A stretch of DNA of 64,000 bases from the NCBI RefSeq assembly GCF_963853765.1, contig NC_088862.1, positions 3,286,001-3,350,000 on the forward strand, written 5' to 3'. Below the pieces are notes generated by a model, which was given only the letters and a program-made list of their open reading frames with translations, was not told where the DNA came from and did not search any database. A program made the position numbers and the translations under genes. Origin of the DNA: Magallana gigas (Eukaryota). Every line of letters starts with the position of its first letter. Positions within the stretch are counted from its first letter, which is position 1. Shown here piece by piece: positions 1,201 to 45,921 of this stretch.

Positions 1201-3756
1201 TCAAATATTTTGGAAAAGTTTTTGGATGCCATTATTTCCGTTTTGGTAAGCTATAGCGAGAGGAGATAATCCGTTTGTTGTTTTTAAGTTTCTATCTGCT
1301 CCATTATCAAGTAAAAGTTTTGCAATACTCTCGTGCCCATTTTTACAAGCTAGATAGAGAGGACTGGCATGGTCTGAAGAACGTAAAAAATTAACAGCCG
1401 CTCCATTATTTAGTAAAATGTTCACAGTGCTTTCACGCTTATTACGACACGCTGCATGGAGAGCAGTGGAATCATCGTCACAACGTAAATTGATATTTGC
1501 ACCTTTTTCCAGCAATAATTGCACGATGGTGTCGTGTCCATTTTGACTCGCTATACAAAGAGAACTGACTCCGTATTGGTCACAAGAATCAACGTACGCT
1601 CCTTTGTTTAGTAGAAGTTGTACAATTTTAAAGTCTCCGTTTTGACAAGCTGAGAAGAGAGGACCTATATTTTCATTGTTCCCTAAATTTGAATCTGCTC
1701 CATTATCTAGTAAAAAGATAACAATACTATAATGTCCTTTCTGGCAGGCTATATGGAGAGGAGTTGGTCCGCATTGCCCACCAAGGTTAATGTCTGCTCC
1801 ATTATTAACTAGAAGTTGTACAGTGCTCTCATGACCATTTTGACTCGCTCTATAGAGAGGACTCGTTGCGTTTATATTGAATGAATTAATAGAAGCTTTA
1901 TTATCTAATAAAAGTTGTACAATGCTATCATGTCCGTGTTCACAAGCAAAATGAAGTGGAGTATCTCCGTTTTTGGTACGTATCTTAATGTTTGCTCCAT
2001 TCCTCAGTAAAAGTTGTGCAGTGCTATCATGTCCACTTTCACACGCAAAATGAAGTGGAGTTGCTCCATTTTTAGTGCATGCATTAATGTCTGCTCCATT
2101 CCTCAGTAAAAGTTGTGCAGTGCTATCATGCCCCTTTTCACAAGCAAAATGTAGCGGTGTGGCTTCGTTTATGGTTCGTGAATTAATGTCTGCTCCATTA
2201 CTCAGTAAAAGTTGTGCAGTGCTATCATGCCCGTTTTCACAAGCAAAATGAAGCGATGTGGCTTTGCTTTCGGTTCGTGAATTAATGTCTGCCCCATTGT
2301 TCAGTAAACGTTGTGTAGTGCTATAATTCCCGTTTTCACAAGCAAAATGAAGCGGGGTGGCTTCGTTTTCGGTTCGTGAATTAATGTCTGCTCCATTATT
2401 CAGTAAAAGTTGTGCAATGCTATAATTCCCGTTTTCACAGGCAAAATGAAGTGGAGTTGCACCGTTTTTGATGCGTGAATTAATGTCTGCTCCATTATTC
2501 AGTAAGAGTTGTGCAGTGCTATCATGCCCGTTTATACAAGCAAAATGAAGGGATGTGGCTTCGTTTTCGGTTCGTGAATTAATGTCTGCTCCATTACTCA
2601 GTAAAAGTTGTGCAGTGCTATCATGCCCGCTTTCACAAGCAAAATGAAGTGGAGTTGCACCGTTTTCGGTTCGTGAATTAATGTCTGCTCCATTATTCAG
2701 TAAAAGTTGTGCAGTGCTATCATGCCCGTTTTCACAAGCAAAATGAAGCGATGTGGCTTCGTTTTTGGTTCGTGAATTAATGTCTGCTCCATTATTCAGT
2801 AAATGTTGTGCAGTGCTATCATGCCCGTTTTCACAAGCAAAATGAAGCGATGTGGCTTTGTTTTCGGTGCGTGAATTAATGTCTGCTCCATTATTCAGTA
2901 AAAGTTGTGCAGTGCTATCATGACCGTTTTCACAAGCAATATGAAGCGATGTGGCTTCGTTTTCGGTGCGTGAATTAATGTCTGCTCCATTATTCAGTAA
3001 ACGTTGTGCAGTGCTATCATGCCCGTTTTCACAAGCAAAATGAAGTGGAGTTGCATCGTTTTCGGTGCGTGAATTTATATCTGCTCCATTATTCAGTAAA
3101 CGTTGTGCAGTGCTATCATGCCCCTTTTCACAAGCAAAATGAAGCGGCGTGGCTTCGTTTTCGGTTCGTGAATTAATGTCTGTCCCATTATTCAGTAAAA
3201 GTTGTGCAGTGCTATCATGCCCGCTTTCACACGCTAAATGAAGTGGTGTGGCTTTGTTTTCGGTGCGTGAATTAATGTCTGCTCCATTATTCAGTAAAAG
3301 TTGTGCAGTGCTATCATGCCCGCTTTCACACGCTAAATGAAGTGGAGTTGCGCCGTTTTTGGTGCGTGAATTTATGTCTGCTGCATTATTCAATAAAAGA
3401 AGTGCAGTGCTATCGTGCCCGTTTTTACAAGCAAAATGAAGTGGAGTTGCACCGTTTTCGGTTCGTGAATTTGTGTCTGCCCCATTATTCAGTAAAAGTT
3501 GTGCAGTGCTATCATGCCTGTTTTCACAAGCAAAATGAAGTGGGGTTGCACAGTTTCCGGTGCATAAATTAACGTTCGCTCCACTTTTCAGTAATTGCTG
3601 CACAATGCTATTTTGCCCGTTTTTACAAGCTGTTAGGAGGAGACTGACTCCGCTTTCCATACATGAATAATTGTCTTCTACCTGACTCAGTAAATGTAGC
3701 TCAGTGCTATCATTTCTCTCAATCTTCTTTAAATGAAGCTCTGAATAATTAAACAT
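1201..3756 (-). CDS. Ankyrin-repeat exon/ORF (24 full 33-aa repeats plus a capping repeat; about 17 are near-identical 99-bp units)
   Basis: ORF translation shows repeated TPLHFACENGHDSTAQLLLNNGADIN. In-frame stop 2 codons upstream of the ATG; candidate acceptor ctaatctatgtttaattattcag|AG with exon start at 3740. Confidence 0.95.
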   Translation of the reverse strand: MFNYSELHLKKIERNDSTELHLLSQVEDNYSCMESGVSLLLTACKNGQNSIVQQLLKSGANVNLCTGNCATPLHFACENRHDSTAQLLLNNGADTNSRTENGATPLHFACKNGHDSTALLLLNNAADINSRTKNGATPLHLACESGHDSTAQLLLNNGADINSRTENKATPLHLACESGHDSTAQLLLNNGTDINSRTENEATPLHFACEKGHDSTAQRLLNNGADINSRTENDATPLHFACENGHDSTAQRLLNNGADINSRTENEATSLHIACENGHDSTAQLLLNNGADINSRTENKATSLHFACENGHDSTAQHLLNNGADINSRTKNEATSLHFACENGHDSTAQLLLNNGADINSRTENGATPLHFACESGHDSTAQLLLSNGADINSRTENEATSLHFACINGHDSTAQLLLNNGADINSRIKNGATPLHFACENGNYSIAQLLLNNGADINSRTENEATPLHFACENGNYSTTQRLLNNGADINSRTESKATSLHFACENGHDSTAQLLLSNGADINSRTINEATPLHFACEKGHDSTAQLLLRNGADINACTKNGATPLHFACESGHDSTAQLLLRNGANIKIRTKNGDTPLHFACEHGHDSIVQLLLDNKASINSFNINATSPLYRASQNGHESTVQLLVNNGADINLGGQCGPTPLHIACQKGHYSIVIFLLDNGADSNLGNNENIGPLFSACQNGDFKIVQLLLNKGAYVDSCDQYGVSSLCIASQNGHDTIVQLLLEKGANINLRCDDDSTALHAACRNKRESTVNILLNNGAAVNFLRSSDHASPLYLACKNGHESIAKLLLDNGADRNLKTTNGLSPLAIAYQNGNNGIQKLFQNI

Positions 3757-6700
3757 AGATTAGATAACAACTGCATTACAAAACTCCAAAAAATTGTTGA
3801 TAACTTTTTTAAATTAATTTTTCAAGAGTTATCTTTATAATTTGCAATTTTACTTGTGGTCTGTTAATCATGCAAATGTAAACAAGGCTCTCCGAAGCAT
3901 TCGTTTGTTAGTAACAAATTTAACCGAAATCAACTTTTCCCTTAATGGTAATTAAGGTGGAATGCTACACCAAAAATTTATTTTATGGATCGTTAGAGTA
4001 TTATTTCTGTAGCAAGATTGCGTTGTTCTAAAAAGGATATACGTCCTTAATTTTTTAATACCATTTTTTGTATTTTTTACGAAAAAGTAGAAAATCTATT
4101 TTGGTTTCAAGTAACGCACTGTAGAGTTAAAATTTTAATGTGAATAAATGCATAATATAAATATCTAATAGATCATGTCCAGTGATGTCAATAAGACGTT
4201 TTATTTTTTTAATAAAAAAATATTTATGATAATAAAAAACTTCATTTGATAATATTTTTCTAACCTATGGATAAAATTTTCTAAAGAAACGTGTTCCATA
4301 GTAAGGAAAAGTAAGGAAATCATTTTAAAAAAAGAAATAGATAATCAAATTGGCGAAATTTTAGAGATATGGCAAATTTTCAAAATTGAAGCACACCCGA
4401 TCGAAAGTAAACTGGTCCCGAGTTGAATAATAGAAAATTTAAATATATAGCAATTTCACCCCAAAACTAGGATGTTTGGTTGTAATATGGTTTGTAAATT
4501 AGGAGAACAATTACAAATTAAATTGATTTTTTGTCTGCACATGAACAAATATTGTTGATTTTAAATTTTTGGCAATTTAGATCGGGATCAGGGTTTTGAT
4601 CGGGATCGGCCAAATTTTGAAGATTAGCAATACTTCTAGAATTTTGTCAATTTGATTCAGTTTTATAAAAAAAAGTGATTGCCTTATATTTCTTCCCCAT
4701 AAGACACGTCTCTTTAAAAGATTTTATCCATAGGTTTGAAAAAAAAATAATTTTTATTTACATAAATAATTTTTTATTAAACAATTTAAACCATCTTGTT
4801 GACATTACTGGTCATGGTTTATTAGATATTTATATTATGCATTTATTCACATTAAATTTTGAACTCTACAGTGCGTTACTTGCAACAAAAATAGATTTTC
4901 TACTTTTTCGTTAAAAATGCAAAAAAATTCGTATAAAAGATTAAGGGCATAATTATATCCTTCTTGAAACAAAGCAATCTTGCTTCAGAAATGATAAATA
5001 TTCATAAAAAAAATTGCTATTGCATTTCGCCTTAACTGACTAACATAGCTTAAAGTATGTGAGGGCAATTTAAATATCAACAACTTTCTGAACACCTTGT
5101 GCACTTTTTTAGATTGTTAACATGGATAATTTTTTTCCCCGCAAACTACTATAATTTTGAAATTCTGTAGAAATATAACAGTGACACCAGAGGCCATGAC
5201 CACGTAAATTTTCAGTGCTGGTGATTTTGGTCTATTGAGGTGTTCTTTTAATACAAAGTGGGATTTTATTTTGACTTATTGTGTGTCAAATATTGTTCTG
5301 TATTGAAATACATGTATACTGGAAAAAAAGAGGAATTTCCATTTGGATTTGTTTGAAACATGAAAACACGAAACAAAGGACTGTCAAAAATTTCTGACAA
5401 CAATTCACCCTAAGCCAAGTAAACCAAAAATTCGGCAGAGTGTGACCAGGGTCCGTGATGTGACAAACTAAAACCCGTATCGGACCAGGCCGAGTGTAAT
5501 TACAACGAAATTGTAATCTTGCGCTACGAAAATGCTCAACATAGGCGTGAAATTAATCTCCCGCGGTCGGTTGTTATTAGAATGAACAGAAAACTGTCAC
5601 ACATGGATGATGACATAACTAATCTTCGCTCGAGATCGATGAAAGACAATATATTGATTCACAACTACCCATATAACCAACAAGAGGACTTGGCCACAAT
5701 GATACCCAATGTTATTAAGCAATTACTGGGTGTTGATGTTGAATTCGTTTGCATCCACAGAAACTGAGTCCACCCACAGTTCAACAAATTACTATAATTA
5801 TGGAATTTTTAAAAATCTCTTGAATAATTTGAAAAAAAAAGTTTTAGTAATGTATTATAATAGACATATTTTTATTGATATATTTCAATGGCATTACTAA
5901 GAAAGGTATTAACATTTATGTATATACATTGTATATACAATTACATGTATCTACACCATAGTGTTACCTTGAACATCAAAAAATGATTTAAACAGAACTG
6001 AATCTTACTTCTTCTAATGCAAAAAAACAGATTGCAGACGACATAGGCCATAAGAACTACTCCTGAAAGTGATGATAGTAGAACTAACACACTGTCAATC
6101 CTGTTATTGTGATTTGTTGATTCGCTGTCTTTATGGTTAAAGGTGTAATTCTCTGTCTGGGTAGCTTCTGTAGCATCTTGGAAATTATTTGTTGTTCTGT
6201 TAAGCATAAAATATATTGTTATAACAATTGCCTGTCATTCTTGCACATTATTTTTTGGCGGTGATTTACAGAGATAATTGTATTTAAATTAATAAAGTTT
6301 TTTCTTTTAACATTTCTCTCAGCAAAAGTACTGATTATTTTTTGTTGTTGTCTAACAAACTTTTAAAAGAACAATTATTATGAAGAATTTATCATTTTTA
6401 AGTTTAAAAAAATATTAAAGAGATGTTTTTTTTTGGTTTTATTTTTTTTTTAATTTTTAAAAATGATTCATTCTTTAAAAAAAAAGTCGCTTTGACACTT
6501 TTAAATCTTTAAAAATTAAATTATCAATTTATACACGACAACGGACAATAAATGGGTTTATCAAAAAGTACTTCTATACCACAAAAACAAAGATACAATG
6601 GTATCAGAATTTTTGCTCAACTTGTATAAATAGAGCTTTCGATTTTTGCCAACACTGTATATTAAATCAGATGCAATTCAAGAGTAAAAAAGATGAGTTC

Positions 6701-8905
6701 TGGAATCAATGATTTTGTGAGGATATGTTATGTTAAAGATAATATAGTTTCACATTAGTACATACGACATTGGGCATTTTCTATCAGTTATTTGAAAAAG
6801 GAAACACCGAGCGCATGTTTGCTCCTACACTATTTTACTACGATATGAAAACCAATATGAACAACAATATACTTCAAAATGGTGTGAATATTGACAGAAT
6901 ACATAGCTCAAAACTGTTTAAAATTTTAAAACTACCTACCTATTATTACCTATTACCTACCTATTACAAGATGGTTCGGCAACAAAACATCCATTTCCAA
7001 TTGCTAAACAACTTGGATCTGTTGAAAACAAAGATAATCCTATACATGGCATTTAATGGGCTCAGTCATTTATAGCCTAGTTTTTAATCATATATATGCA
7101 TTCTAACACATATAAGTAAGAAAATGTATGTGTTGAAGTACATGCTAGTTTTTTTTATTATTATCTCCCGGAAGGTGTGTAATAGTCCTTGCAAAATTAT
7201 TTACAATGATGAGAATATAATTATCAACTATTGGTAAATAAGAATTGGATGTATGAATATGTTTAAACCATATCAACTTAATATTATTGCACAAATTGTA
7301 CGATTTGTGGGCCTGTCATATTAGAATACATTACGAAAAAAATAGATACACTTGCTAATTTTGTTAATTTTTAACTATTTTATGGAATCAGATCTTTATT
7401 ATCAGTACTGTTGTCTAAAGAATGCCATCGCACAAAAAAGAATAGATAAATAAATTATATGTTGACGGATTACTTTTCCAGCTATAATCTCGAAACCAAG
7501 TAGACCAAGTAGAAAACATTCCGTTTAATTAATAGTTTTCTTCTCATGTCTTTCAATAATGTTGGAATCTTCTAAACTCTAGTTAATAAACGATCAATTT
7601 TATAAATACCAAATGGCATTTGTTTTCAAAATTTAATTGGTTTAATTAAAGGAAAAAATGAAAACGGGAGAGGCACCCACCTCTCAATCAAAACAAAGAC
7701 GATGTTATAATGAGCCTGATCGTAATTAAGTTTGATTGCTAACAACTCTACATGTAGGTCTCAAATTGGTTGTGTAAAGAAGCATACCTGAGATCATAAC
7801 TAATCAGAGCATTTTTATCCAGAAAAATGTTGTTTTTTCATTTTTCTGTTTGCGTAGTCGAGTTTTTTTTTTTTTAATTTGAACGTTTATATCTAATTCA
7901 ATACATAAAACACCTTTATTGCTTATCGTTGTTGACAAGAGTGACGTAGAGCAAAACCAATACTGGATATCTAAAATGCTATCTGAGGGTCAAATTGATA
8001 AATTGATAAATTGATATTAGTACAATTCGGAATAGTGCGATACTCCGACTACTCTGATTGTATTAAATGAAATGATAAGCCAAAATATATTATATATCAT
8101 ATTCTTAACAATCATTTATAAACTTAAAAGATTTTGGTAGTTTATCACACAACGTAAACATGTAACATTATTATACATCAGAATGATTATTCTATATAAC
8201 GCGTCACTTGCCAGGGCGAACAAAACATCATGTCTCACAGGAAATAAATATCGTGTCTCCAAAGGTATGAAAAAGTCACTATGAGCATACGATGTTGTCA
8301 AATATAATAAATCATTTAAATTCTCTTTAAAACACAAAATACAATTTCACTACAAGTGATTCGAATTTATGAAAGAAAAAAGAGACAATAAGATTAAAAA
8401 AAACCCAAAAAACAAACAATCACGACGTTAATGCCTTCGACAAGTAAAAAATTATTAGAATTCGACGTATTTTGTATAATCAAATGTTGCTCGGTATAAT
8501 AAAACTTTTATTGCATGATGGTGAAGCCCTCAGGAAATTTTTCTTTTGGGAATAAATTATCATATTTCCTGAACATTCGTGCAATAAATCTATATTGTTA
8601 TTGGTTTCCTTGAAAGAATTGCGCACTGTTTACTCAGAAAATAGGATATTATTATTGACACGTTACGGGTTCATAAACCAAAAACTTACATTGAAAATTC
8701 CTTAAAGATTGATGCGAGGAATTTGGACATCCAGATTGAAAATGTTGGCACGCCTTAGAATTCACCCTTGAGAATCGTTTGTTCAAATACAAACAAAGAC
8801 CTAAAATAAAACCGAATGATATCATTCGATGAATTCACTTTAAATTTGTTTGTATATTTCAATGAAATTCTGATACATCGTTCATTTAAACATATAGTAT
8901 TATTA

Positions 8906-8942
<37 letters not shown>

Positions 8943-11899
8943 ACTTATTTATATATTTTTTTATTGAGCAAAATCAAAATTTATTCTGATAAATGGCAAC
9001 ACACTTTTTTTTGTCAATAATCTTCACACTAATTACCTTTAGTTATATTTTGTTTTAACCAAGCTGAATAATATTGGATGAATATAAAAGTTGTCTCTTG
9101 TCAATTCTACGCTACAAAAAGTAAAGGTTGTTCTAAACCAAGCTAGTTTTTGCAATAATTACAAACTTCTGTACGTTGTAGGCCTACAATTGCAAAGTTG
9201 GTGTTATATAGTTTTCGGCTGAATTATTTTAGCATTTGATAAATGCAAATGATAATTGATTCAAAATAATGGTGGCTTCTCTACCTTCCTGTATCCATAT
9301 GAAAGGATGTATATAACAGAACTCAAGAAGTTCTGTGATATTTTCGTTCGGTAAACATAAGTATCCATTAGACTCGTTACAACTGATTGCAGACGATCTT
9401 TCGTTCCATTCTGTTTGATTTCTAGGACAGAATTCTGTTGAGTAAACTGGAAACTCATAACCATCCAGCTTTTTCTGAAAATTTTATATAAAAAAAAAGT
9501 TATTTTACATAACACTTTGTGAATTATCTTTTATTTCTCTGAGATAATTTATTTATTCTTATGATGTTAAAAAGGGCAGCGAAACTAGACAGGGAAATTT
9601 ATTATTACTCTAATTGTTATGCATATTAATTTTTATATATACTTATATATAAGAATTTAATACTTGAAGCAAATTGAGCATTGTGGTGAAATACAGTGAA
9701 TTTACATTTAATTAGGTATTATATATATTATCTCCTATCAAATCAAATTAATCAAAACAATTTGGAAAATATTGAACTTTTTAAAGAGAAAGAATTTTTC
9801 ACAGATCTTTCAATTAGTAAACGTGTATGGCAGTGCGGAATTCACTGATTGATCATGGAATTAATTTGAACCCTATGTTTTTTTTCTTAATATCAAGTTA
9901 CACAAAGCTTATTTTTTAATTAACGCCTGGAACTTTTCGGACGCTAAATCTGTTAAAACAAAGAAGCGGAATGCTTTGTTTCAGGAACTGTTAGTCTCTA
10001 GTTAGAACAAAATTGTATAATTATATCTGTTTCCATGTCGATTATTTAATGCTTGTACCGGATAGTAATACCAGTTTGAAGCATATAACTACTTTTGTTT
10101 TTTGTGTCTCCTGCCTGTTGGGCGAGAAAATTTTACTTTGAATAATGTTTATCCAATGGGAATATGATGTGAGTTTTCTTATATTTTTATATTTCTTATA
10201 GAATAAGATTACATTATATATACCATGCGGGTATCTAAAAGAAAACATTACGGTAGGAAATTCTATATGTCATGCTAGAAAATGTTTTTCCTTAAGAAAT
10301 CGTTTTCTAATGATATTAAATTACATTTTCGATAATTGGCTCACCTGTGACATGGAAACGCTAAAGTAAAGGGGTTAAATTACTCCATAGGGGAATAGGG
10401 GTATGGTATTTGGCACAATGTTTGGTTTTGTTAGAATTGGCGAGTGCAAAAAGGAAGTACCGTATGGAAGTTACAGTTACTTCAGATATTGGATATATTT
10501 TTCTGACAATGACATTGTTTATATCTAAAAGCTAGTCCATTTTTTAAGAAAGTATAAAAATACTGTCGTTTCTATCTTGTTTATGCCACAGTTTTCGCCC
10601 GTTTTTAACCCTTAAAGCAGATTGTTTTGCTACGCATATGTCAACGTTACCCATTTTCTAAATAGCAATGAATTGATGCACAAATTTTATTTATTTCCGG
10701 CATTTCATAACGTTTTACGATAACATGCATAGTTATTGGAACATAATATTGTTATTTGCATCATATCTTTTTTTAATAATTATTAAATACAATGGACACG
10801 GCGCACCAGACCAGAAAAAAGCGCTGAACAATAAAGCAGGAAGAGGAAAATGAAACTATTGATGGGACATGGTGACACACAAACCCATGATTCAGCAAAT
10901 ATCGAGTTTACAAGATTTCCTCATATTTTATATATCATATGATAAGATGAACTTTTGAAAAATTACGGTGTTCAAAAGTTAATAAATCAAATTAAAAAGA
11001 GAAAAATAGAATTACGCGTTGGGCCAATACGAACATATTGAGTTTTTCTTCCGCTTCACAGCCACGCAGGCGCAGGGGAAAGTAAATACTACAGCGTGGT
11101 GTACATCGAATAGCTTCAAATTCAAATTCTTCTTTCAGTGTGTCAATCCTATTGTAACTATATTTAGACTGAAATCGCAATCACGTGACACTAAACCAAT
11201 GTCCAAAACAACCCATTTGTGTACATGTGCAATTTCCAGATGAGTTAAATGATCTGTAAATGAATAGGTGATGACTTATGATGCGAAAAACCTTCCGTAT
11301 GATGAAATCTCTTTTTATTCTCGTTGTCATAATAAAAAATCTATTTTAAGTCACCGTGCCACTTTAAGGATTGAAATTAAGAAACTTGATAATCTAAATT
11401 CATATTGGTATGGAAATAGACCCCTTTTTGATAAATATTGACGAAAATATTAATAATTCTTAGAAATAAAGTTATTTACTTTTAAACCTAAGAAGAAAAA
11501 CGGGACGAAACTAGTCCAAAATTGTATAGAAATATTGATAAAAATATAAATAATACTGATAAGCTTTACGTGTGATAAGTGCATTTAAAAGGTGTGCGCA
11601 ACATAAATTCAACATAGAGAAAACAAAGACAAGAAGTAAAAACATTTACTATGAAACGCTTATTTTAAAACCTGCAACATTTGTGTATGTCATACTTATT
11701 TTACCATTATAATAATTAAAAAACCCATTAAATTTAAATATGCAGAAAGAGCTGCCATGTGGTTTTTCTGTGACTGTTATTATTCAAAACATACTGCATA
11801 TACTTAATCAAGTTAACTGTACATACTTACACACTCAAAGATGGGAGAAGACAAAAAAGATCCTAATAAAACAAAACATATTCGTGAGCTTATTTCCAT
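1201..11899 (-). CDS. Predicted single-pass receptor with Cys-rich ectodomain and cytoplasmic ankyrin array; join 11899-11831, 9474-9285, 8800-8690, 7018-6961, 6196-6009, 3740-1201 (3156 nt, 1051 aa)
   Basis: All five introns are GT-AG and the phases match in series (0,1,1,2,1), giving one open frame: MEISSRICFVLLGSFLSSPIFEC|KKLDGYEFPVYSTEFCPRNQTEW...|GLCLYL...|YPSCLAIGNGCFVAEPSCN|RTT...TM...CIRR|KLHLKK...ankyrins. The first five exons are well supported; the join to the ankyrin exon is inferred from phase, the acceptor and a CTAAT branch motif. Confidence 0.72.
3952..5035. mobile_element. Foldback MITE with long inverted arms, flanked by TTAA (Kolobok-like ends)
   Basis: TTAA-GGTGG...CGCC-TTAA; about 3960-4330 is the reverse complement of about 4660-5030 (e.g. 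gtaacgcactgtagagtt / aactctacagtgcgttac). Confidence 0.8.
5360..5767 (+). pseudogene. Degenerate L1/Tx1-type LINE ORF1 fragment
   Basis: DITNLRSRSMKDNILIHN...EDL...IKQLLGVDVEFVCIHR resembles the ORF1p DLENRSRRNNL motif; stops in the upstream part. Confidence 0.6.
6009..6196 (-). CDS. Receptor exon 5: S/T/N-rich stalk plus transmembrane helix
   Basis: ttttatgcttaacag|A acceptor and A|gtaaga donor; encodes TTNNFQDATE...DSVLVLLSSLSGVVLMAYVVCNLFFCIRR. Confidence 0.85.
6961..7018 (-). CDS. Receptor exon 4 (YPSCLAIGNGCFVAEPSCN)
   Basis: ctttgttttcaacag acceptor, AG|gtaggt donor, phase 1 to 2; not in the ORF track. Confidence 0.85.
8506..8589. repeat. Degenerate palindromic end of an interspersed element
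   Basis: tttattgcatga...caggaaat / atttcctg...tcgtgcaataaa inverted arms. Confidence 0.55.
8690..8800 (-). CDS. Receptor exon 3 (GLCLYLNKRFSRVNSKACQHFQSGCPNSSHQSLRNFQ)
   Basis: ggttttattttag acceptor, T|gtaagt donor, phase 1 to 1. Confidence 0.85.
8909..8937. repeat. (GT)n microsatellite
   Basis: Direct reading. Confidence 0.95.
9285..9474 (-). CDS. Receptor exon 2 (KKLDGYEFPVYSTEFCPRNQTEWNERSSAISCNESNGYLCLPNENITELLEFCYIHPFIWIQE)
   Basis: ttttcag acceptor, G|gtagag donor, stop-free in a frame different from the listed ORF; four Cys and three N-glycosylation sequons. Confidence 0.85.
11831..11899 (-). CDS. Receptor exon 1: signal peptide (MEISSRICFVLLGSFLSSPIFEC)
   Basis: accATGG start context, hydrophobic core, TGT|gtaagt phase-0 donor; an in-frame upstream ATG at 11920 is an alternative start. 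Confidence 0.75.
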
Positions 11900-13329
11900 G
11901 GTTTTCAACAGGAAGGTCATCACCCAGCGTCCAGGTACTTGTATGTTCTATCGAAAAAGCTAATTTATTTTAAATTCATGCACAATATAGTGTTAAAAAA
12001 CGTTCCGCATGTATCATATTTATGCTTTGTTACTTTAAGTTGCGGAAGTTATAGACACTGAATAGGAATGTTTCCGGCCATTTTATGACGCTAAAAAAAA
12101 GGAACCTAGCTTTTTGTAATAAAAGATTCCAATCGCATATACCGAATAAAAGTTTACTTGTACATGTCACGATTTTCTGAATAGAAATGGCGAATAACAA
12201 TTTCTTATTGAGTGTTCACTTGAATATCTAATCTGTTTTGCCACTTTCTTTGTTTTTAACACACACTGAAGTACAACCGACCAATACAATTTAAGTTCCT
12301 CCTTGTAATGGTCGATTAACTGTAATAGGGTTTACAAATCAAATTTCACTTATAAAGCATACATATAGGCCTATTTTTATTTAGAAATATTTTTTGAATC
12401 CGGTAAACAATATTTTTATGATTTTTTTTTTTAAATGACATTGTTTTACCGCGGGAAATGATTTTACTTCCATATGAGTTTGGTTGTATATAGAAATTAA
12501 CCCATGATATATAAAATATGTCATAAATATTTATACGCACAAATCTTCATGCACACAACAAAATGAAAATTTCGGGTAGCAACTAAATTATTTTTTCCCA
12601 AATAACTTCTAGCGTTATTTAGACAATGGTAATCTTTCTCTGCATTGGCAACTTGAAGCTTCTCTTATACGCATTATAGAAATAAATAAAATTGAAAACG
12701 ATTTAAATGAAATACTGTAGATTTAATCTTTTCATAAATAAATATAACATATGATAACAGACGTAGAACAAAGAAAATATGATCGTTGACAAAAAGGTCA
12801 AGATGAAAATGTTTAGAAAAAGATTGAAAAAAAAAATCAATAATGTCCAAGTATCTAAGCGTCAAGCTATTATTTCTTACAGAAAAAATAAAACATATTG
12901 TATACAATTTTCTTGATAAATGTATGTATATATTAAACATTAAATAGATAATTTTTTTGCAAAATTCATTATCACATATATAAACTTTAAAGTTAATAAT
13001 AATAAAAAAAATCAATATACAAACATAATAAACACCGTGGTTGGAAAAGAAACAAAAAGTCAATGGGTTTCATCGCTCATCAGATCTACACGTATACTTG
13101 TAATGAACAACGAACAATAAAGCAGTATCTAGTTTTGATAAGTCACCAAATAACAATAAGAGGACCAAATGTAAATATTCAACAAAAACTTGAAATTTGA
13201 AGACAAAATCCGAAGAAAGTCAATCAGTGCCTTCTTACTTTTTTTCAAAATAAAAATTGCTTCCTTGGTTTTCAATGCAATGTCAACATCAAGGGATTCT
13301 TTTGTATCTGTCCCTAGTTCACAATTTTA

Positions 13330-37000: not shown

Positions 37001-38050
37001 TTATAAAACCAGAAGGATGATGCTGACTAATGAGAACAGTGTCCAGGACGACCTTCTACATTCAGCAGCGTTTCCACCCTTTTTATTTGTGTTGGACTTC
37101 GATCCCGATCCGTTTGATTCTTCATCCCCCATTATGATTCTGTCTGTACAAACGTGTTCCGGGATTTCTTGGATAGGTTGACAGTTGTCGGGCACCTGTT
37201 TGCTCGCGGGACAGTTTTGTATTTTATCATTATCCAGGACGTCTTTGACGCTCGCGCCTTGTAGCGCCTCTGGGCCGGTACATGTCCCCGTTTCAACCAA
37301 ATCCTTTAGCCCTACCTCAGAGGCATATATATTTTTCATGTACACAATATCGCAAGTGCACTGAAATTGACATCCAGAAATGATCAGCGATTTGGTGAGA
37401 CCTAGTCTCGGATAGACATTGCACTCCAAATTATCAAAAGCGACTTGTTTGAACTCAACAGTGTTGAATTGAGTATCGGCAAACGCAGCACTTCTTAGAT
37501 GTTTCAGCCGACCATTTTCATATTTTATACCCAGGTCAGAAGTAACATTGTTAAACGCAAATGGTTCCATTTTGTGCACTGTTGTGTCCGTGAAAGTGAG
37601 TTGTAGCTTTGTCTTGATATTCCAAAACGCGTAACTTTTCATTGTTGTTATGGTCGACTTTCTGAACGTGATGGACACCGGACTAAGATGTGTAAAAGCC
37701 CCTTGCTTGATTTCACCAATCACAGTCAGATCGAACAAAATTGTTTTCAAATTTTTATGATTACTTGGTATTGCGCATGCACTGATTTGTCCGAAATTGC
37801 AGCGACTAAATGACAGCGTGGTCAAATTAGGAAGGTTTTCGAAAGCTTTCGGGGGTAGTTCTGTCACAGTGTACTCATCAAAAACAATTTTTTCAGTATT
37901 TGTTGGAAACGATTCAGGAAAATGAACTGCCGCGGGACATTTGACATTGTTACCTCTACAGACGCATTGTTTTGGACATCCTAGGATCAATGCTGGTAGG
38001 ATACAGGCTATAATCAGGAGTGACCCTCCTAGGCTGTATCTTGAAGCCAT
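37001..38050 (-). CDS. Leucine-rich-repeat cell-surface protein, predicted GPI-anchored (349 aa, single coding exon)
   Basis: Signal peptide, LRRNT CPKQCVC, LRR_5-like repeats (xIxxxAF), LRRCT FQCTCD...CTGP, low-complexity spacer, terminal hydrophobic tail with no cytoplasmic part; acceptor ttcttcag at 38065. Confidence 0.9.
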   Translation of the reverse strand: MASRYSLGGSLLIIACILPALILGCPKQCVCRGNNVKCPAAVHFPESFPTNTEKIVFDEYTVTELPPKAFENLPNLTTLSFSRCNFGQISACAIPSNHKNLKTILFDLTVIGEIKQGAFTHLSPVSITFRKSTITTMKSYAFWNIKTKLQLTFTDTTVHKMEPFAFNNVTSDLGIKYENGRLKHLRSAAFADTQFNTVEFKQVAFDNLECNVYPRLGLTKSLIISGCQFQCTCDIVYMKNIYASEVGLKDLVETGTCTGPEALQGASVKDVLDNDKIQNCPASKQVPDNCQPIQEIPEHVCTDRIIMGDEESNGSGSKSNTNKKGGNAAECRRSSWTLFSLVSIILLVL

Positions 38051-41080: not shown

Positions 41081-44000
41081 ATGCGTGAGTATTTGTTTAT
41101 TTATGTTTATCAAAGTATTTCAGGTTAATATTGTTTTTGAGTTTCTAGTTACTTTTTTTTTAATTTCCTTTTGTCGGGTTAATAAAAATTTCATTTACTG
41201 TTTTATAAAACATGCATTATTAGCAATAAACCTTTATCAAATAACTAGCTATGAAATAAGTAAAAGTCGAATTTAAACAAAGCAATCAAGCTTAAAAATC
41301 AGCATTTTCAACAACTCAAAAGCAATTAAGCAAGAACAAAAGGTACATCGAAATTTGAATATGTGGAAATATTATATATAAAACTAAAGTCTTCTTTAAT
41401 TAAGCAAATTTTTACAATCTAGTAAGCTAATCTATTTGGCTTTCATTTTGATTATGTGGAAAATTGGTTTACAGACATAAATTTTGTTATCAATATGAAT
41501 TATGGAACATTAATCACCGATTAGAAATTTGTCATGGCCGTATGTGACCTATTCCCCCACAGGGCAACTGTCAATCTCGCATATATTACGATTCTAACAC
41601 GTGTCTAAAATATGTTCATTTTACATTTTATGTTTTGATTTCTTAAAAGAACTTCAATAGCTGCGCAATATCTTGGCCAAATTTAATCATTTTTAATTAT
41701 GGAACCTATAAATTCGTATAAATAGTGAATCGCAGGGTAAAGAACGTTCCTTTTCGATGTTTACCGTGTAACCGATTCTGGTAATGTTAATGTATTCACC
41801 ATCTACATACAGCTAATTAAAATACATGTACAAAGAAGTACAATTAACTTATGTTGTTCAGATTTTAAGATATTCACTCTAACTTCCTGCAAACTTCTGT
41901 GTAATTTGTGTTAACTTTTTCAGACTACAATGGCCGATTGTCGCCTTCTATCTCTACATTACTGGGTCTGTTTACTCTCCTTAAAATAACTACCGCCGTT
42001 GACCTGAATATTAATTTGAAGCATATAATGAACCAGTATGTATATCTATGTGGTCGGGATTCAATCTGTAATGAAGACTTGTTAACAACACCAGGCTATG
42101 AAGAAAGCGGACGAATCAACATAAGCTGCCCTGTGTGTAGCTGTGAGGATATATGTCGAATACACGGAGACTGTTGTCCCGATTTTGCATCGAACACGTG
42201 TGTACAAACTTCATTTAAACCAGATAAAGGACACGATGTGGTAGAGTACTTCATGAAAAATGATTGTCCACAAGATGCTGATGAAAATTTAGTAAGACGA
42301 TGTCAAGAGACAAACACTGATGAGAATGTCTTAAGGCGATACCCAGTAACTTCTACAGCCACCAACATAACGTACAGCAACGTCAAATGTGCAAGGTGTA
42401 GCAAGGACCTTTCCATTGTCCCGTGGCTAATTCAGACAGATTGTAATGTTGAAAAAATGTCCTTTTCCAGTGTTGATGACCTTTGGAAATCACTCAATAC
42501 CTTGCAGTGTAACATAACGTACGAACCAACTGAAGAATTAAAAGAAATTCTTCCAAGAATATGTGACAAAAATGTCCATCTGATCGCCGAATGCAATGCA
42601 ACAGGAACTGTGTCAGATTTCGATGAACACATGGAAGAAGCGTGTAAATCGACCAACCTGCCCATTGGCGCGTTTAAGAATCCGTTTTGTTTATTGTGTA
42701 ATATTCAGGAAGAATCATTCGACCCGCCAATCTCAACTTGCAATGTTACAGGAAAACTGAAATATATAGAAGAAAGAATCGCAAACGGATGTCTTAATAA
42801 AAGCGTGGATTTACTGACTTATCCATACAAGAATAAATTTTGCGAAGATTGCAATTTACCTAAAACTGATGAAGGTGACTTCAAGTATGCAGACGTTGAT
42901 CTGACTATTCAGGTTTACAACAAATTTCATACTTTGACTGATATCAATAACGTTTCAAAACTTGTGTATTTGTCTAAATATTCCATACGTTCTTTTAATT
43001 TTTCGTTGAATTCCACTTTGAGTGAAAGTATTGAAATGCAGCAAAGGTCACAAGATCAAATAAATGTGAAATTTATCAACTGGAACAACAGAAATAAATG
43101 GTGTAGAGAGAGAGAAAATGTCTATGCTGCAGGAGATAATGGATTACAGCAGTCATGCTCCTGTAAAGCAGATTGCAATCAAACAAACAGTTGCTGCAAC
43201 GACCCTGATGAGGCATGGACTAAAAGACTTTTGAAAACATGGGGTTGTGTCAATTCAACAATTCCGCGTACATCATCTTCAGATAATCACTACTTTATGA
43301 TCAGTAAATGTCAAGATAGCTACAACAACGAACTCATAAAACGTCTCTGCGAGTCGGACGATGAGGAAAACTATCTTAGTTTTATACCTTTGACTGATAT
43401 TCAATCATTATTGACTTACAAAAATTACTTTTGTTTACTATGTGTTTTTCCGAACACTCCCAGGAAATTAATTGTCCCATGGACATTCTCCATGATATGT
43501 CCTGTAATATTTAACTTTAAGAATGAAGAAAGCCTTGAATCAGTTATCAATCATGGGTTATCACGGCAGTGTACTTTCAATCTTGTCCCAAGCTCTGATG
43601 ATTATATCCCAGACAGTTGTGATGGTTGGGGTGGACGAAGTCTATACTGTTCAGTCTGTTATCAATATAAAACATCTGTAAGCGACAATATCTACGTTAG
43701 TCGGGGATACCGTTCAATATTTTCACTGTTTGATTACTCAGAGGAAACAGTTAAAAACAACAATGATGAAAAGTGCTCAAATGATGAAGTCTTTGATCAG
43801 GTAAGATTTTGAGCAGTTTAATTAATGAATTTTCCCTCTTTTAATTGAAAACTGTTTAGAAATTTAAGGTTAACATAATGTTTTAAACAAAAGTACATCA
43901 AAAATGTTGATCCCTGATATAAATTTTGTTACCTTACGAGAAATGTAGACTGCTTTTTCTTGGAAATTGAAATCGACAAATTCGAATAATAAGAATTGAT

Positions 44001-45921
44001 ATCGTAAGCTATTGATTCTGCGCTGTATTTCCATTATTTCAATTACTTTGCTTGTAAAGTTTTGTTGTCACATGCTCTTTTTTGGTTTTCCAAAGTTCCT
44101 TTATCCTTATTTTGCCTTTGAGAATGATTCCTCTAACTGCAACCGTCAAAACGGTTTGAGCATGTGACATAAAGGTTATTATTTCACATATCACCAATTT
44201 GAATATTAAAATATTCTATAGTTTTCATTCCAATTTGCTTTTTTTTGTAGGACGAATGTAGAAAGCTTGTCTGCAATCCAAGGAAAACTCTAGTGAATGG
44301 AACTTGCAAAACAATGATTTCATCCTACAAATCAAAAACCTATAATGTTGCATTTCAGGCGGTCATTTATTCAGAGATCATAATGGAGATTTACAAATAT
44401 GATGTCATTCAAAAGATAAAATCGATTGTTATAGAAGATCTCTCCAATGATTCAGATTTGGAAATTCTTGATTTTAAATACTACCATCGAGTTAACAGGA
44501 CATGTGAGAGGATGATCGAAGTATCCAAACTTAACCCTCTTTCGATTGAAGCATTCGTAAGGATATACTTCCGCAGAAAATCTGGTTCTAAATTTTTGGA
44601 TTCCGATATGATCGAACACTCCCTATTCAATGCGACTTCGAAAACTCGGTCCTGGGGAAACATATCAATAAACATTCATAAAAGTATTCATGCTTGGTTC
44701 CTTCCAATTTCTAAGACTGAAATGTACTCGACTCCATTCTGTAATGGTCTCCTGGAATATCGCTTTTCCTCTTATGATAGAAGCGATCCCGGCACGGATA
44801 TAACGGAATTGCTGTTCTGTCCAAAAGTGTTGCTTAATCCCGATAAATATACGATTTCTTCGGACGGCTTGCAAGCGTTTGTCAAATACCTGAATCGAAC
44901 GTTTTATCACAATGAATTTTTTCGGGGGGTCAACAATACTCTCCACATTTGTGCTAGTGATCTCTCCTCTGGTGTTATGGCGTTAACAACCCTTGAAAGA
45001 CAATCAAAACGATCAGAGTTTCCACTTGCTCTTCAAGTTATATCAATCTTTTCTACATGTATCTCTTTGATTGCTCTGTGTATTACATTCATTGTGTACT
45101 GCGTTCTTGAAAAATTGCGATCCATTCCGGGGCAGAATTTGATGTGTTTCGTAGGATCCCTATTCTTTGCTCAACTTTTCTCACTATTGAAAGACTTTTT
45201 TACTGTGAATACCGTGGTGTGTGAAGGAGTGGGCATTTTAACATACTATTTCTGGGTGTCGGTATTTACGACCGCCAGTGTATGTTGTTTTCACATGTGT
45301 CGTGTGTTTGTTTGTAACGCCAGATTTCAGAACAAATCGTTTTGCACTCAAACCGTAGTGTGGTATATGATATATTCGTTTTCAGTGCCTCTCCTTCTCA
45401 CCGTTATCACTATAGGATGTCATGTTATTTTATCGCCTTCTCGTCTATCTGGTTTTGGGGGATACGCTTGCTTCACACTTGACAGAGATACTCAACTGTT
45501 CGCTTTTATTATTCCTATAACTGTTATTTGTTTCGTAAATTTCATTTTATTCTCAGTTACTTTTTATAAAATCCATGATGCCCCGACAATGGAAACGGCT
45601 AATTCCCATTGTAGAAACGATCTCTTCATTTACTTCAAATTGTTTCTTTTGACAGGAACAGCGTGGTTGCTACAGGTTATCGACGGTCTGTTTGCCTTGT
45701 CTCCATTTTCCTATCTTGTAACAATATTTAATGCTCTTCAGGGTTTGTACATCATGATTTCTTTTGTCTTGAACGATCGCGTGAAAAATATGTTTCGTGA
45801 ACTTGGGATGAATGAGAGGTTTAGATTCCTGCATGTTACTTTTAAGTCTTCACACACTACGGGAAGTACACAACTCACACAGAGAATCACTGCTTCCTCA
45901 AACCATGAAAGCCACGTATAA
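41081..45921 (+). CDS. Family-B-like (Methuselah/adhesion-related) GPCR with large Cys-rich ectodomain; join 41081-41084, 41924-43800, 44251-45921 (3552 nt, 1183 aa)
   Basis: ATGC|gtgagt micro first exon, tttttcag acceptor in phase 1, CAG|gtaaga / ttgtag|GAC in phase 0. Signal peptide, somatomedin-B-like CSCxxxCxxxxxCC motifs, seven hydrophobic helices with 7tm_2-style LRSIPGQNLMC, CEGVGILTYYFW and FNALQG. Confidence 0.88.

What the first reader, a model, noticed from the sequence alone, without database searches (positions are those of the whole stretch)
1201..11899. Hidden six-exon receptor: Cys-rich ectodomain and TM helix fused to about 25 cytoplasmic ankyrin repeats
Seen: five small exons with good splice sites and matching phases encode a signal peptide, 10-Cys ectodomain, stalk and TM helix. 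The TM exon ends in phase 1, and a phase-1 acceptor with a CTAAT branch motif at 3740 continues into the ankyrin ORF, giving 1051 aa with no stop. Established: Notch is the classical single-pass receptor with intracellular ankyrins, but it has 7 repeats and an EGF/LNR ectodomain, none of which is present here. Inference: this is a lineage-specific signalling or immune-type receptor with no enzymatic, TIR or death domain, using an expandable ankyrin scaffold as its output.
Basis: partly seen in the sequence, partly recalled or inferred. Interest (0 to 1): 0.85.

Follow-up and report, generated by a model that had tools for sequence, protein, structure and literature searches.

The report
Oyster membrane receptor with ankyrin tail
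The six-exon gene is real and its transcripts are spliced as predicted, but it is a cut-down member of a very large oyster family of membrane-anchored, NLR-like immune-type proteins that has lost the family's ATPase switch, not a new kind of receptor.

Summary
The six minus-strand exons (11899..1201) join in frame into 1051 codons with no stop. RNA-derived contigs from several independent studies carry all five splice junctions, including the decisive TM-exon to ankyrin-exon joint (6009|3740).

- Every long family protein with a recognisable cytoplasmic domain, except two ankyrin-only transcripts and one scramblase chimaera, is signal peptide, 10-Cys ectodomain, TM helix, nSTAND3 P-loop NTPase, then an ankyrin array. 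That is a membrane-anchored STAND/NLR-like protein.
- This gene is a derivative with no NTPase. No trace of one exists in the 64-kb window.
- The acceptor at 3740 lies inside a degenerate ankyrin repeat, so the array is 5'-truncated.
- Similar NTPase-less forms occur as complete transcripts in other samples, and probably arose more than once.

The ectodomain folds confidently (pLDDT 95) but matches no solved structure and no Pfam family. It is known only from molluscs.

The most likely role, which is inferred, is a switch-less membrane scaffold or modulator of its NTPase-bearing paralogues. An expressed young relic is the main rival.

The scan's first readers noted a similar Cys-rich-ectodomain/ankyrin gene elsewhere in this genome (s1-380941).

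The parts
11831..11899 (-). Exon 1: start codon (11897-11899) and signal-peptide-like segment MEISSRICFVLLGSFLSSPIFEC. An in-frame ATG at 11920 would add 7 aa.
   Evidence: The junction to exon 2 is seen as a loose end at 9474 in X1, X6 and X9.
9285..9474 (-). Exon 2: first 63 aa of the 10-Cys ectodomain. It is the most conserved family module.
   Evidence: At least 127 copies in the genome. 350 cluster representatives at E<=0.001. RNA joint to exon 3.
8690..8800 (-). Exon 3: middle of the ectodomain (phase 1 to phase 1).
   Evidence: RNA joints on both sides.
6961..7018 (-). Exon 4: end of the ectodomain (YPSCLAIGNGCFVAEPSC).
   Evidence: 82% identical to aa 9-25 of P0010. RNA joints 7018|8690 and 6196|6961.
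6009..6196 (-). Exon 5: Asn/Thr/Ser-rich stalk, TM helix (about 6016-6090, aa 179-203) and the basic stop-transfer residues IRR (ends in phase 1; the next K is completed by exon 6).
   Evidence: Hydropathy. RNA joint 6009|3740 in X6 and X9.
3741..6008 (-). Intron 5 (2268 nt). It holds no NTPase remnant. It contains a roughly 210-bp dispersed repeat at 3951-4160 and the CTAAT motif just upstream of the acceptor.
   Evidence: tblastn with pre-ankyrin parts of 16 homologues finds nothing significant. The repeat has more than 40 genomic copies.
1201..3740 (-). Exon 6: cytoplasmic ankyrin array of about 25 repeats, with the stop codon at 1201-1203.
   Evidence: Pfam Ank E 5e-199 with 24 stretches. 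Repeat register.
3660..3740 (-). Degenerate first ankyrin repeat (..SELHLKKIERNDSTELHLLSQVEDNYSC). The splice acceptor sits inside it.
   Evidence: It aligns residue for residue with internal repeats of paralogues, of the type SPLYIACQNGHDSTVKLLLSNGADINLC.
1882..3564 (-). 17 homogenised 33-aa repeats with mean 86% nt identity. Variation is concentrated at positions 3, 5, 15, 23 and 26 of the unit.
   Evidence: pS 0.25, pN 0.105, pN/pS 0.42.

Best explanation
This is a real, transcribed six-exon gene. It encodes a 1051-aa type I membrane protein in this order: signal peptide, a mollusc-specific 10-cysteine ectodomain of about 120 aa, a glycosylatable stalk, one TM helix, and about 25 cytoplasmic ankyrin repeats.

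It belongs to a very large oyster lineage-specific family. The canonical architecture of that family is ectodomain, TM helix, nSTAND3 P-loop NTPase, then ankyrin array, that is, membrane-anchored STAND/NLR-like proteins. In this copy the NTPase module is gone. The TM exon splices to an acceptor that lies inside a degenerate ankyrin repeat of a 5'-truncated array.

Shown: the gene model, the splicing, the family membership, the absence of the NTPase, and the position of the acceptor.

Inferred: lacking the nucleotide switch that drives STAND oligomerisation, the protein cannot signal like its paralogues. It most likely acts as a membrane-tethered ankyrin scaffold that competes with or modulates them. 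It would do so by sharing their extracellular partner through the ectodomain, or their cytoplasmic ligands through the ankyrin surface. An exon-5-skipping isoform may add a secreted, ectodomain-only form.
For: Gene model and phases.

All five junctions are in RNA contigs from different studies. Fourteen listed runs hold 20-27% of the sampled words; two are recorded as RNA-Seq and the other twelve are only guessed to be RNA. The exons make up 37% of the stretch searched.

Family evidence:
- At least 127 exon-2 copies in the genome.
- P0007, P0016, P0020, P0030, P0032, P0036, P0043, P0054 and others match exons 2-4 at their N-termini and carry nSTAND3 plus Ank.
- By eye, about 22-24 of the 29 best paralogous exon-2 copies have an nSTAND3-coding stretch 10-53 kb downstream on the same strand. 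The window copy has none within 2.5 Mb.
- In paralogue L040 the NTPase and ankyrins share one 1995-codon open frame.

No NTPase similarity exists anywhere in the window. The start of exon 6 aligns to internal ankyrin repeats.

The ORF is intact, and pN/pS is 0.42 among the repeats.

NTPase-less ecto-TM-ankyrin proteins also occur as complete transcript ORFs elsewhere: P0153 in four SRA runs and P0210 in one. They do not group with the window protein in the ectodomain tree.
Against: - No function was tested.
- No annotated protein in the 5.8-billion-protein collection matches the ankyrin ORF at more than about 61% identity. Conservation of this particular gene in other oyster species is therefore not shown.
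- The pN/pS signal among repeats may predate the loss of the NTPase.
- The acceptor inside a decayed repeat, and repeat debris in intron 5, fit a recent rearrangement that selection has not yet judged.
- One run's main contig skips the TM exon, which shifts the frame.
- The runs are Logan contigs. They show presence, not expression level.
Confidence: 0.6

Rival explanations
1. Expressed young relic. A recent deletion or rearrangement removed the NTPase from a canonical ecto-TM-nSTAND3-ankyrin gene. The remnant is still transcribed and spliced through a fortuitous acceptor, but it has no selected function.
For: - The acceptor lies inside a degenerate ankyrin repeat.
- There is dispersed-repeat debris in intron 5.
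- No close annotated orthologue or even a self-match exists in the protein collection.
- There is a frameshifting exon-5-skipped form.
- The family is huge and turns over quickly, and several copies carry stops.
Against: - 1051 codons stay open in a 30-40% GC genome.
- All splice sites are canonical.
- Spliced RNA is found in several independent studies and under two organism labels.
- The repeats show pN/pS 0.42.
- The same NTPase-less architecture occurs as complete ORFs in other samples.
Confidence: 0.27
2. One reading: an autonomous new class of receptor, analogous to Notch, in which the ankyrin array is the signalling output.
For: The protein has an ectodomain, a TM helix and ankyrins, and no other recognisable cytoplasmic domain. 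Two other NTPase-less proteins exist.
Against: - Its nearest relatives at both ends are NTPase-bearing STAND proteins.
- The array is 5'-truncated.
- The NTPase-less proteins do not form one clade.
- No Notch features are present: no EGF, LNR or RAM.
- There is no evidence of regulated cleavage.
Confidence: 0.1
3. Two genes: a short ectodomain-TM protein, and a separate ankyrin protein starting at the ATG at 3756 from its own promoter.
For: Short family members of about 220 aa (ectodomain plus TM helix) are common. Low-depth contigs in X6 run unspliced across the acceptor, 3711-3943.
Against: Contigs in X6 and X9 join 6009 directly to 3740, at higher depth than the unspliced ones (14.8 and 12.7 against 2.8-5.2). 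The unspliced contigs resemble the low-level intron coverage seen all along the gene.
Confidence: 0.03

Closest known systems
Oyster ectodomain-TM-nSTAND3-ankyrin proteins. Examples: C. gigas LOC117690361 (P0007, 1476 aa), C. angulata LOC128173180 (P0163, XP_052694853.1), C. virginica LOC111133220 (P0194), UniProt A0A8W8ML17 (P0144).
   Same: - Homologous signal peptide and 10-Cys ectodomain, 56-70% identical over 122 aa.
- The same small-exon layout for exons 2-4, with a stalk and a single TM helix.
- A long C-terminal array of 33-aa ankyrin repeats, 44-58% identical.

   Different: They have a variable linker of roughly 40-140 aa and a 450-500-aa nSTAND3 NTPase module (Pfam PF20720, E 1e-19 to 1e-24) between the TM helix and the ankyrins. 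The window protein goes from the TM helix to ankyrin repeats within about 5 residues and has no P-loop.
Crassostrea receptor-like TRADD-N expansion (Kaur, Iyer, Burroughs and Aravind 2021, eLife, PMC8195603).
   Same: The paper describes a constant N-terminal Cys-rich extracellular domain and TM helix. This is followed by variable intracellular modules that include STAND NTPases and ankyrin repeats, and the whole is read as immune or apoptotic receptors of sessile marine animals.
   Different: Those proteins have a DED-TRADD-N dyad after the TM helix. None was detected here or in the paralogues scanned. Whether their Cys-rich domain is the same fold was not tested.
Cytosolic HEPN_DZIP3-nSTAND3-ankyrin proteins of oysters (P0001, P0003, P0004, P0014).
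   Same: They give the best-scoring matches to the ankyrin array, 56-58% identity.
   Different: They have an N-terminal HEPN domain in place of the ectodomain and TM helix, and they keep the NTPase.
Notch
   Same: Single-pass type I topology with cytoplasmic ankyrin repeats.
   Different: There are no EGF, LNR, NOD or RAM domains. The repeat count is about 25 rather than 7. The ancestry is different (a STAND family). There is no evidence of cleavage-dependent signalling.

Membership tests
Oyster ecto-TM-nSTAND3-ankyrin family (membrane-anchored STAND) | N-terminal 10-Cys ectodomain homologous to the family's | tested here: met
   Exon 2 gives E 1e-25 to 1e-34 to genomic copies. It is 56-70% identical over 122 aa to family proteins. 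Ten invariant Cys.
Oyster ecto-TM-nSTAND3-ankyrin family (membrane-anchored STAND) | Single TM helix after a low-complexity stalk | tested here: met
   Hydropathy peak 2.44 at aa 179-203, at the same relative place as in 19 relatives.
Oyster ecto-TM-nSTAND3-ankyrin family (membrane-anchored STAND) | nSTAND3 P-loop NTPase (PF20720) between the TM helix and the repeats | tested here: not met
   No Pfam hit in any exon. No tblastn similarity anywhere in the 64-kb window, even at E 5 in 3.5-12.5 kb.
Oyster ecto-TM-nSTAND3-ankyrin family (membrane-anchored STAND) | C-terminal array of 33-aa ankyrin repeats | tested here: met
   PF00023 E 5e-199 with 24 stretches.
STAND / NLR-like NTPases in general | Central P-loop NTPase switch domain | tested here: not met
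Notch receptors | EGF repeats and LNR modules in the ectodomain; RAM plus 7 ANK inside | tested here: not met
   Pfam finds only a sub-threshold EGF_Mua-3 hit (E 0.084, 13 bits against a cut-off of 27) in exon 2 and no Notch or LNR family. There are about 25 repeats.
Frizzled-type CRD (FZ). An automatic name given to one ESM Atlas cluster. | Fz domain profile and the mainly helical 10-Cys fold | tested here: not met
   None of the 63 ectodomains hits any Pfam family. No PDB sequence match for the profile. No PDB fold match. The model is mostly beta-strand.
TNFR-type Cys-rich domain | TNFR_c6-like ladder of disulfide modules | tested here: inconclusive
   One weak AlphaFold DB row only (E 1.4, probability 0.51). 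Nothing in the PDB.
TRADD-N receptor-like expansion of Crassostrea (Kaur et al. 2021) | DED-TRADD-N dyad after the TM helix | tested here: inconclusive
   No such Pfam hit here or in the paralogues. However, the Pfam TRADD_N model found nothing in the whole genome or in the control genomes, so the test has no power.

The most novel reading that the evidence does not exclude
NTPase-less ectodomain-TM-ankyrin proteins are a recurrently evolved, selected class of decoys or negative regulators. They would control the membrane-anchored STAND (transmembrane NLR-like) receptors of bivalves. Alternative skipping of the TM exon would add a secreted ectodomain form. Together these would give oysters a tunable, three-state (full, switch-less, soluble) version of one receptor module, built on an ectodomain fold not yet seen in any solved structure.
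Probability: 0.2. Interest if true: 0.7.

Novelty: new variant of a known kind. Interest (0 to 1): 0.5.

Why it matters
Oysters have no adaptive immunity and rely on very large, fast-evolving receptor families. This locus gives RNA-supported proof that one such family places a STAND-type ankyrin array directly under the membrane, behind a mollusc-only Cys-rich ectodomain. It also shows that the family produces switch-less derivatives that are still expressed.

If these derivatives regulate their full-length paralogues, they would parallel the truncated or decoy NLRs of plants and vertebrates.

The gene seems to be missing from the protein collections searched, so family censuses based on annotation will undercount such forms.

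The ectodomain (pLDDT 95, no PDB or Pfam match) is a good target for structure determination and ligand hunting.

Tried and rejected
- NTPase remnant. I searched intron 5 and the whole window with the pre-ankyrin parts of 16 homologues. Nothing was found.
- Closest DNA-level paralogue of the exon-6 5' end, to find a breakpoint. Only a dispersed 210-bp repeat matched. The earlier fetch returned only 10 kb per locus, which left most paralogues' TM-to-NTPase introns unseen.
- Origin of the ankyrin array. I compared the less-homogenised C-terminal repeats. All relatives score 50-56%, whether or not they carry the ectodomain, so the origin is unresolved.
- P0153 and P0210 against the own genome. 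They show only 55-68% ankyrin matches, so they come from other organisms. Their species was not identified.
- Pfam TRADD_N over the genome. No power: nothing rang even in the control genomes.
- Ectodomain fold searches. PDB Foldseek and VIA-align wide gave no match. The PDB profile search and Pfam on 63 members also gave no match.
- Literature searches for nSTAND3, oyster and ankyrin. Only Kaur et al. 2021 is relevant.
- The + strand ORF at 5519-5767 looked to me, from memory, like an L1 ORF1 fragment. Pfam gives no hit, so I make no claim.
- I did not test binding with complex prediction, because no binding claim is made.
Full report
**1. The observation**

On the minus strand the six proposed exons are 11899-11831, 9474-9285, 8800-8690, 7018-6961, 6196-6009 and 3740-1201.
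- All are bounded by GT..AG. Their phases (0, 1, 1, 2, 1) fit.
- Joined, they give 3156 nt, that is 1051 codons with a single terminal stop.
- The product starts with a signal-peptide-like segment.
- It continues with a region holding the ten cysteines that are invariant in the family and six N-glycosylation sequons.
- Next comes an Asn/Thr/Ser-rich stalk, then one hydrophobic helix at about aa 179-203 followed by RRKLHLKK.
- The rest is an ankyrin array with 24 Pfam Ank stretches at E 5e-199. I count about 25 repeats including a degenerate first one.
- The CTAAT motif upstream of the 3740 acceptor is present.

**2. RNA evidence**

Fourteen listed runs from seven studies hold 20-27% of the sampled words of 1201-9519. 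Two are recorded as RNA-Seq; the other twelve are only guessed to be RNA. The exons make up 37% of that stretch.

I laid four runs on 3520-9519.
- The decisive joint 3740|6009 (skipping 2268 nt, GT..AG on the minus strand) is in two contigs of X6 and one of X9. Both are recorded as RNA-Seq, come from different studies and carry different organism labels.
- 6196|6961 is in X6.
- 7018|8690 is in X1 and X6, plus one raw read of X19.
- 8800|9285 is in X1, X6 and X9.
- The loose end at 9474 in three runs is the reverse complement of the last 30 nt of exon 1.
- Unspliced contigs across the acceptor exist in X6 at lower depth (2.8-5.2 against 14.8). They resemble the thin intron coverage along the whole gene.

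One X1 contig joins exon 4 directly to exon 6, with only 25 nt on one side, so this is tentative. Skipping exon 5 shifts the frame and stops after 149 aa, inside the last exon. That would be a secreted ectodomain-only product that should escape nonsense-mediated decay (the NMD rule is established knowledge).

**3. What the gene belongs to**

The genome is 564 Mb in 29 contigs.

The exon-2 peptide has at least 127 copies in it. It matches 350 cluster representatives in the 1.8-billion-protein library.

The ankyrin ORF has no near-identical protein in the 5.8-billion collection. Its best matches are oyster proteins of 1200-1480 aa at 44-61% identity that carry PF20720 (nSTAND3).

tblastn of those proteins on the window shows that many of them begin with the same ectodomain. 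P0007, P0016, P0020, P0030, P0032, P0036, P0043, P0054 and ten more do so.

Pfam on these, and on the long exon-2 hits, gives one dominant architecture: ectodomain, TM helix, linker, nSTAND3, ankyrin array. The family is thus a membrane-anchored STAND (NLR-like) family.

By eye:
- About 22-24 of the 29 best paralogous exon-2 copies have an nSTAND3-coding stretch 10-53 kb downstream on the same strand.
- The window copy has none within 2.5 Mb, while its ankyrin exon starts 5.5 kb downstream of exon 2.
- The NTPase search scored only 89 of 165 candidates, so these counts are lower bounds.

In the one paralogue whose large exon I could read (L040), the NTPase and ankyrins lie in one 1995-codon open frame. 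Its acceptor sits just before the FEQW motif of the NTPase.

**4. How this copy differs**

No NTPase similarity exists anywhere in the window, even at E 5 between 3.5 and 12.5 kb.

The first residues of exon 6, and the codons just upstream of the acceptor (..NYSELHLKKIERNDSTELHLLSQVEDNYSC), align position by position with internal ankyrin repeats of paralogues, of the type SPLYIACQNGHDSTVKLLLSNGADINLC. The acceptor therefore lies inside a decayed repeat, and the array is truncated at its 5' end.

Intron 5 carries a 210-bp dispersed repeat with more than 40 copies.

The nearest ectodomain relative in the genome is on contig 3, with 85% identity in exon 2. It appears to be the NTPase-bearing gene of P0010, which shares 82% identity in exon 4 and a recognisably homologous stalk.

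I conclude that the gene descends from a canonical family member, or from a fusion of parts of two members, by loss of the NTPase-coding part. Which of the two, and when, could not be resolved.

**5. Is it alive?**

For:
- The ORF is open over 1051 codons.
- The 17 central repeats are 86% identical in DNA, with pS 0.25, pN 0.105 and pN/pS 0.42.
- Amino-acid variation is concentrated at five positions of the 33-aa unit. Three of them (3, 5 and 15) lie in the hairpin and first-helix region that ankyrin proteins use to bind partners (the structural assignment is established knowledge, not tested here).
- Two of four exonic differences seen in RNA contigs are synonymous. This is too few to weigh.
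- Complete NTPase-less ecto-TM-ankyrin ORFs occur on transcript-like contigs elsewhere: P0153 (473 aa) in four SRA runs and P0210 (600 aa) in one. They are not from this genome.
- In an ectodomain tree the three NTPase-less proteins do not group, and P0210 sits in the other major clade. The alignment is only 122 columns, so resolution is weak. This suggests recurrent origin.

Against: the selection signal may predate the truncation, and no orthologue of this particular gene was found.

I put a functional switch-less member at about 0.6 and an expressed relic at about 0.27.

**6. Mechanism (inferred)**

In STAND proteins the central NTPase drives ligand-dependent oligomerisation. The C-terminal repeats sense ligands and hold the switch off. 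This is established for Apaf-1, NLRs and bacterial Avs.

A protein that keeps the ectodomain, the membrane anchor and the repeat array but lacks the switch cannot assemble in that way. It can still occupy the same extracellular partner and the same cytoplasmic ligands.

The most economical role is therefore a competitor or scaffold that tunes the full-length paralogues.

**7. The ectodomain**

An AlphaFold model was built from a 63-sequence family alignment. Its first row is 70% identical to the window's ectodomain. The model is confident (pLDDT 95.2, pTM 0.86) and mixed beta/alpha.
- It has no match in the PDB by Foldseek (best E 2.1) or by VIA-align over 48,161 chains (no Z of 2 or more).
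- The family profile hits no PDB sequence, and none of the 63 members hits Pfam.
- In AlphaFold DB and the ESM Atlas it matches only mollusc proteins. There it is joined to nSTAND3 plus ankyrins, or to short TM proteins of about 220 aa. By entry name it is also joined to roco-like, HEPN_DZIP3-like and MEGF10-like proteins.
- One Atlas cluster bears the automatic name 'FZ domain', which the tests do not support.

**8. Prior knowledge and novelty**

Kaur et al. 2021 (PMC8195603) described Crassostrea receptor-like proteins with a Cys-rich extracellular domain, a TM helix, a DED-TRADD-N dyad and variable C-termini that include STAND NTPases and ankyrins.

I found no paper on the ecto-TM-nSTAND3-ankyrin family as such, or on NTPase-less derivatives.

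First-stage notes of this scan list a similar hidden Cys-rich-ectodomain/ankyrin gene and HEPN-nSTAND3-ankyrin genes elsewhere in this genome. These are unverified, but they are consistent.

The finding is a new variant of a known kind. The gene model is right, the 'new receptor class' reading is overstated, and the interest is moderate.

Noticed in passing
window 8690-9474 (minus strand): RNA contigs of X6 and X9 join the end of exon 3 (8690) back to the start of exon 2 (9474). This could be a 301-nt circular RNA of exons 2 and 3, or an assembly-graph cycle.
   Followed up: no
window 3740|6961: An X1 contig joins exon 4 directly to exon 6, skipping the TM exon. The frame shifts and stops after 149 aa in the last exon, which would give a secreted ectodomain-only product. 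Only 25 nt lie on one side of the joint.
   Followed up: partly
window 3951-4160: A dispersed repeat of about 210 bp has more than 40 copies at 84-90% identity across the genome, some in tandem arrays about 1.3 kb apart on contig 6. It has high depth in the RNA contigs.
   Followed up: partly
window 7320-7519: A very high word depth (211) in run X1, with loose ends at 7448 shared by X1 and X19. This is probably another expressed repeat inside intron 3.
   Followed up: no
window 37001-38050 (-), 41908-43812 (+), 44293-45921 (+): Neighbouring long ORFs: a leucine-rich-repeat ORF (LRR_5, E 6e-10); a 634-codon ORF with no Pfam match; and a secretin-family 7TM ORF (7tm_2, E 1e-12). The last may be an adhesion-GPCR-like gene.
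   Followed up: partly
G000:C8:37843436-37844007 (+): Three exon-2-like ectodomain segments lie in tandem within 600 bp, suggesting a family member with a repeated ectodomain module.
   Followed up: no
P0206 (413 aa) and P0158 (752 aa): These family ectodomains are joined to a scramblase domain (P0206) or to nSTAND3, ankyrins and a cyclic-nucleotide-binding domain (P0158). They may be further architectures or merged gene models.
   Followed up: no
window 11920: An in-frame ATG 21 nt upstream of the proposed start would add MTFLLKT, and a stop lies three codons further upstream in the same frame. Which ATG is used is open.
   Followed up: partly
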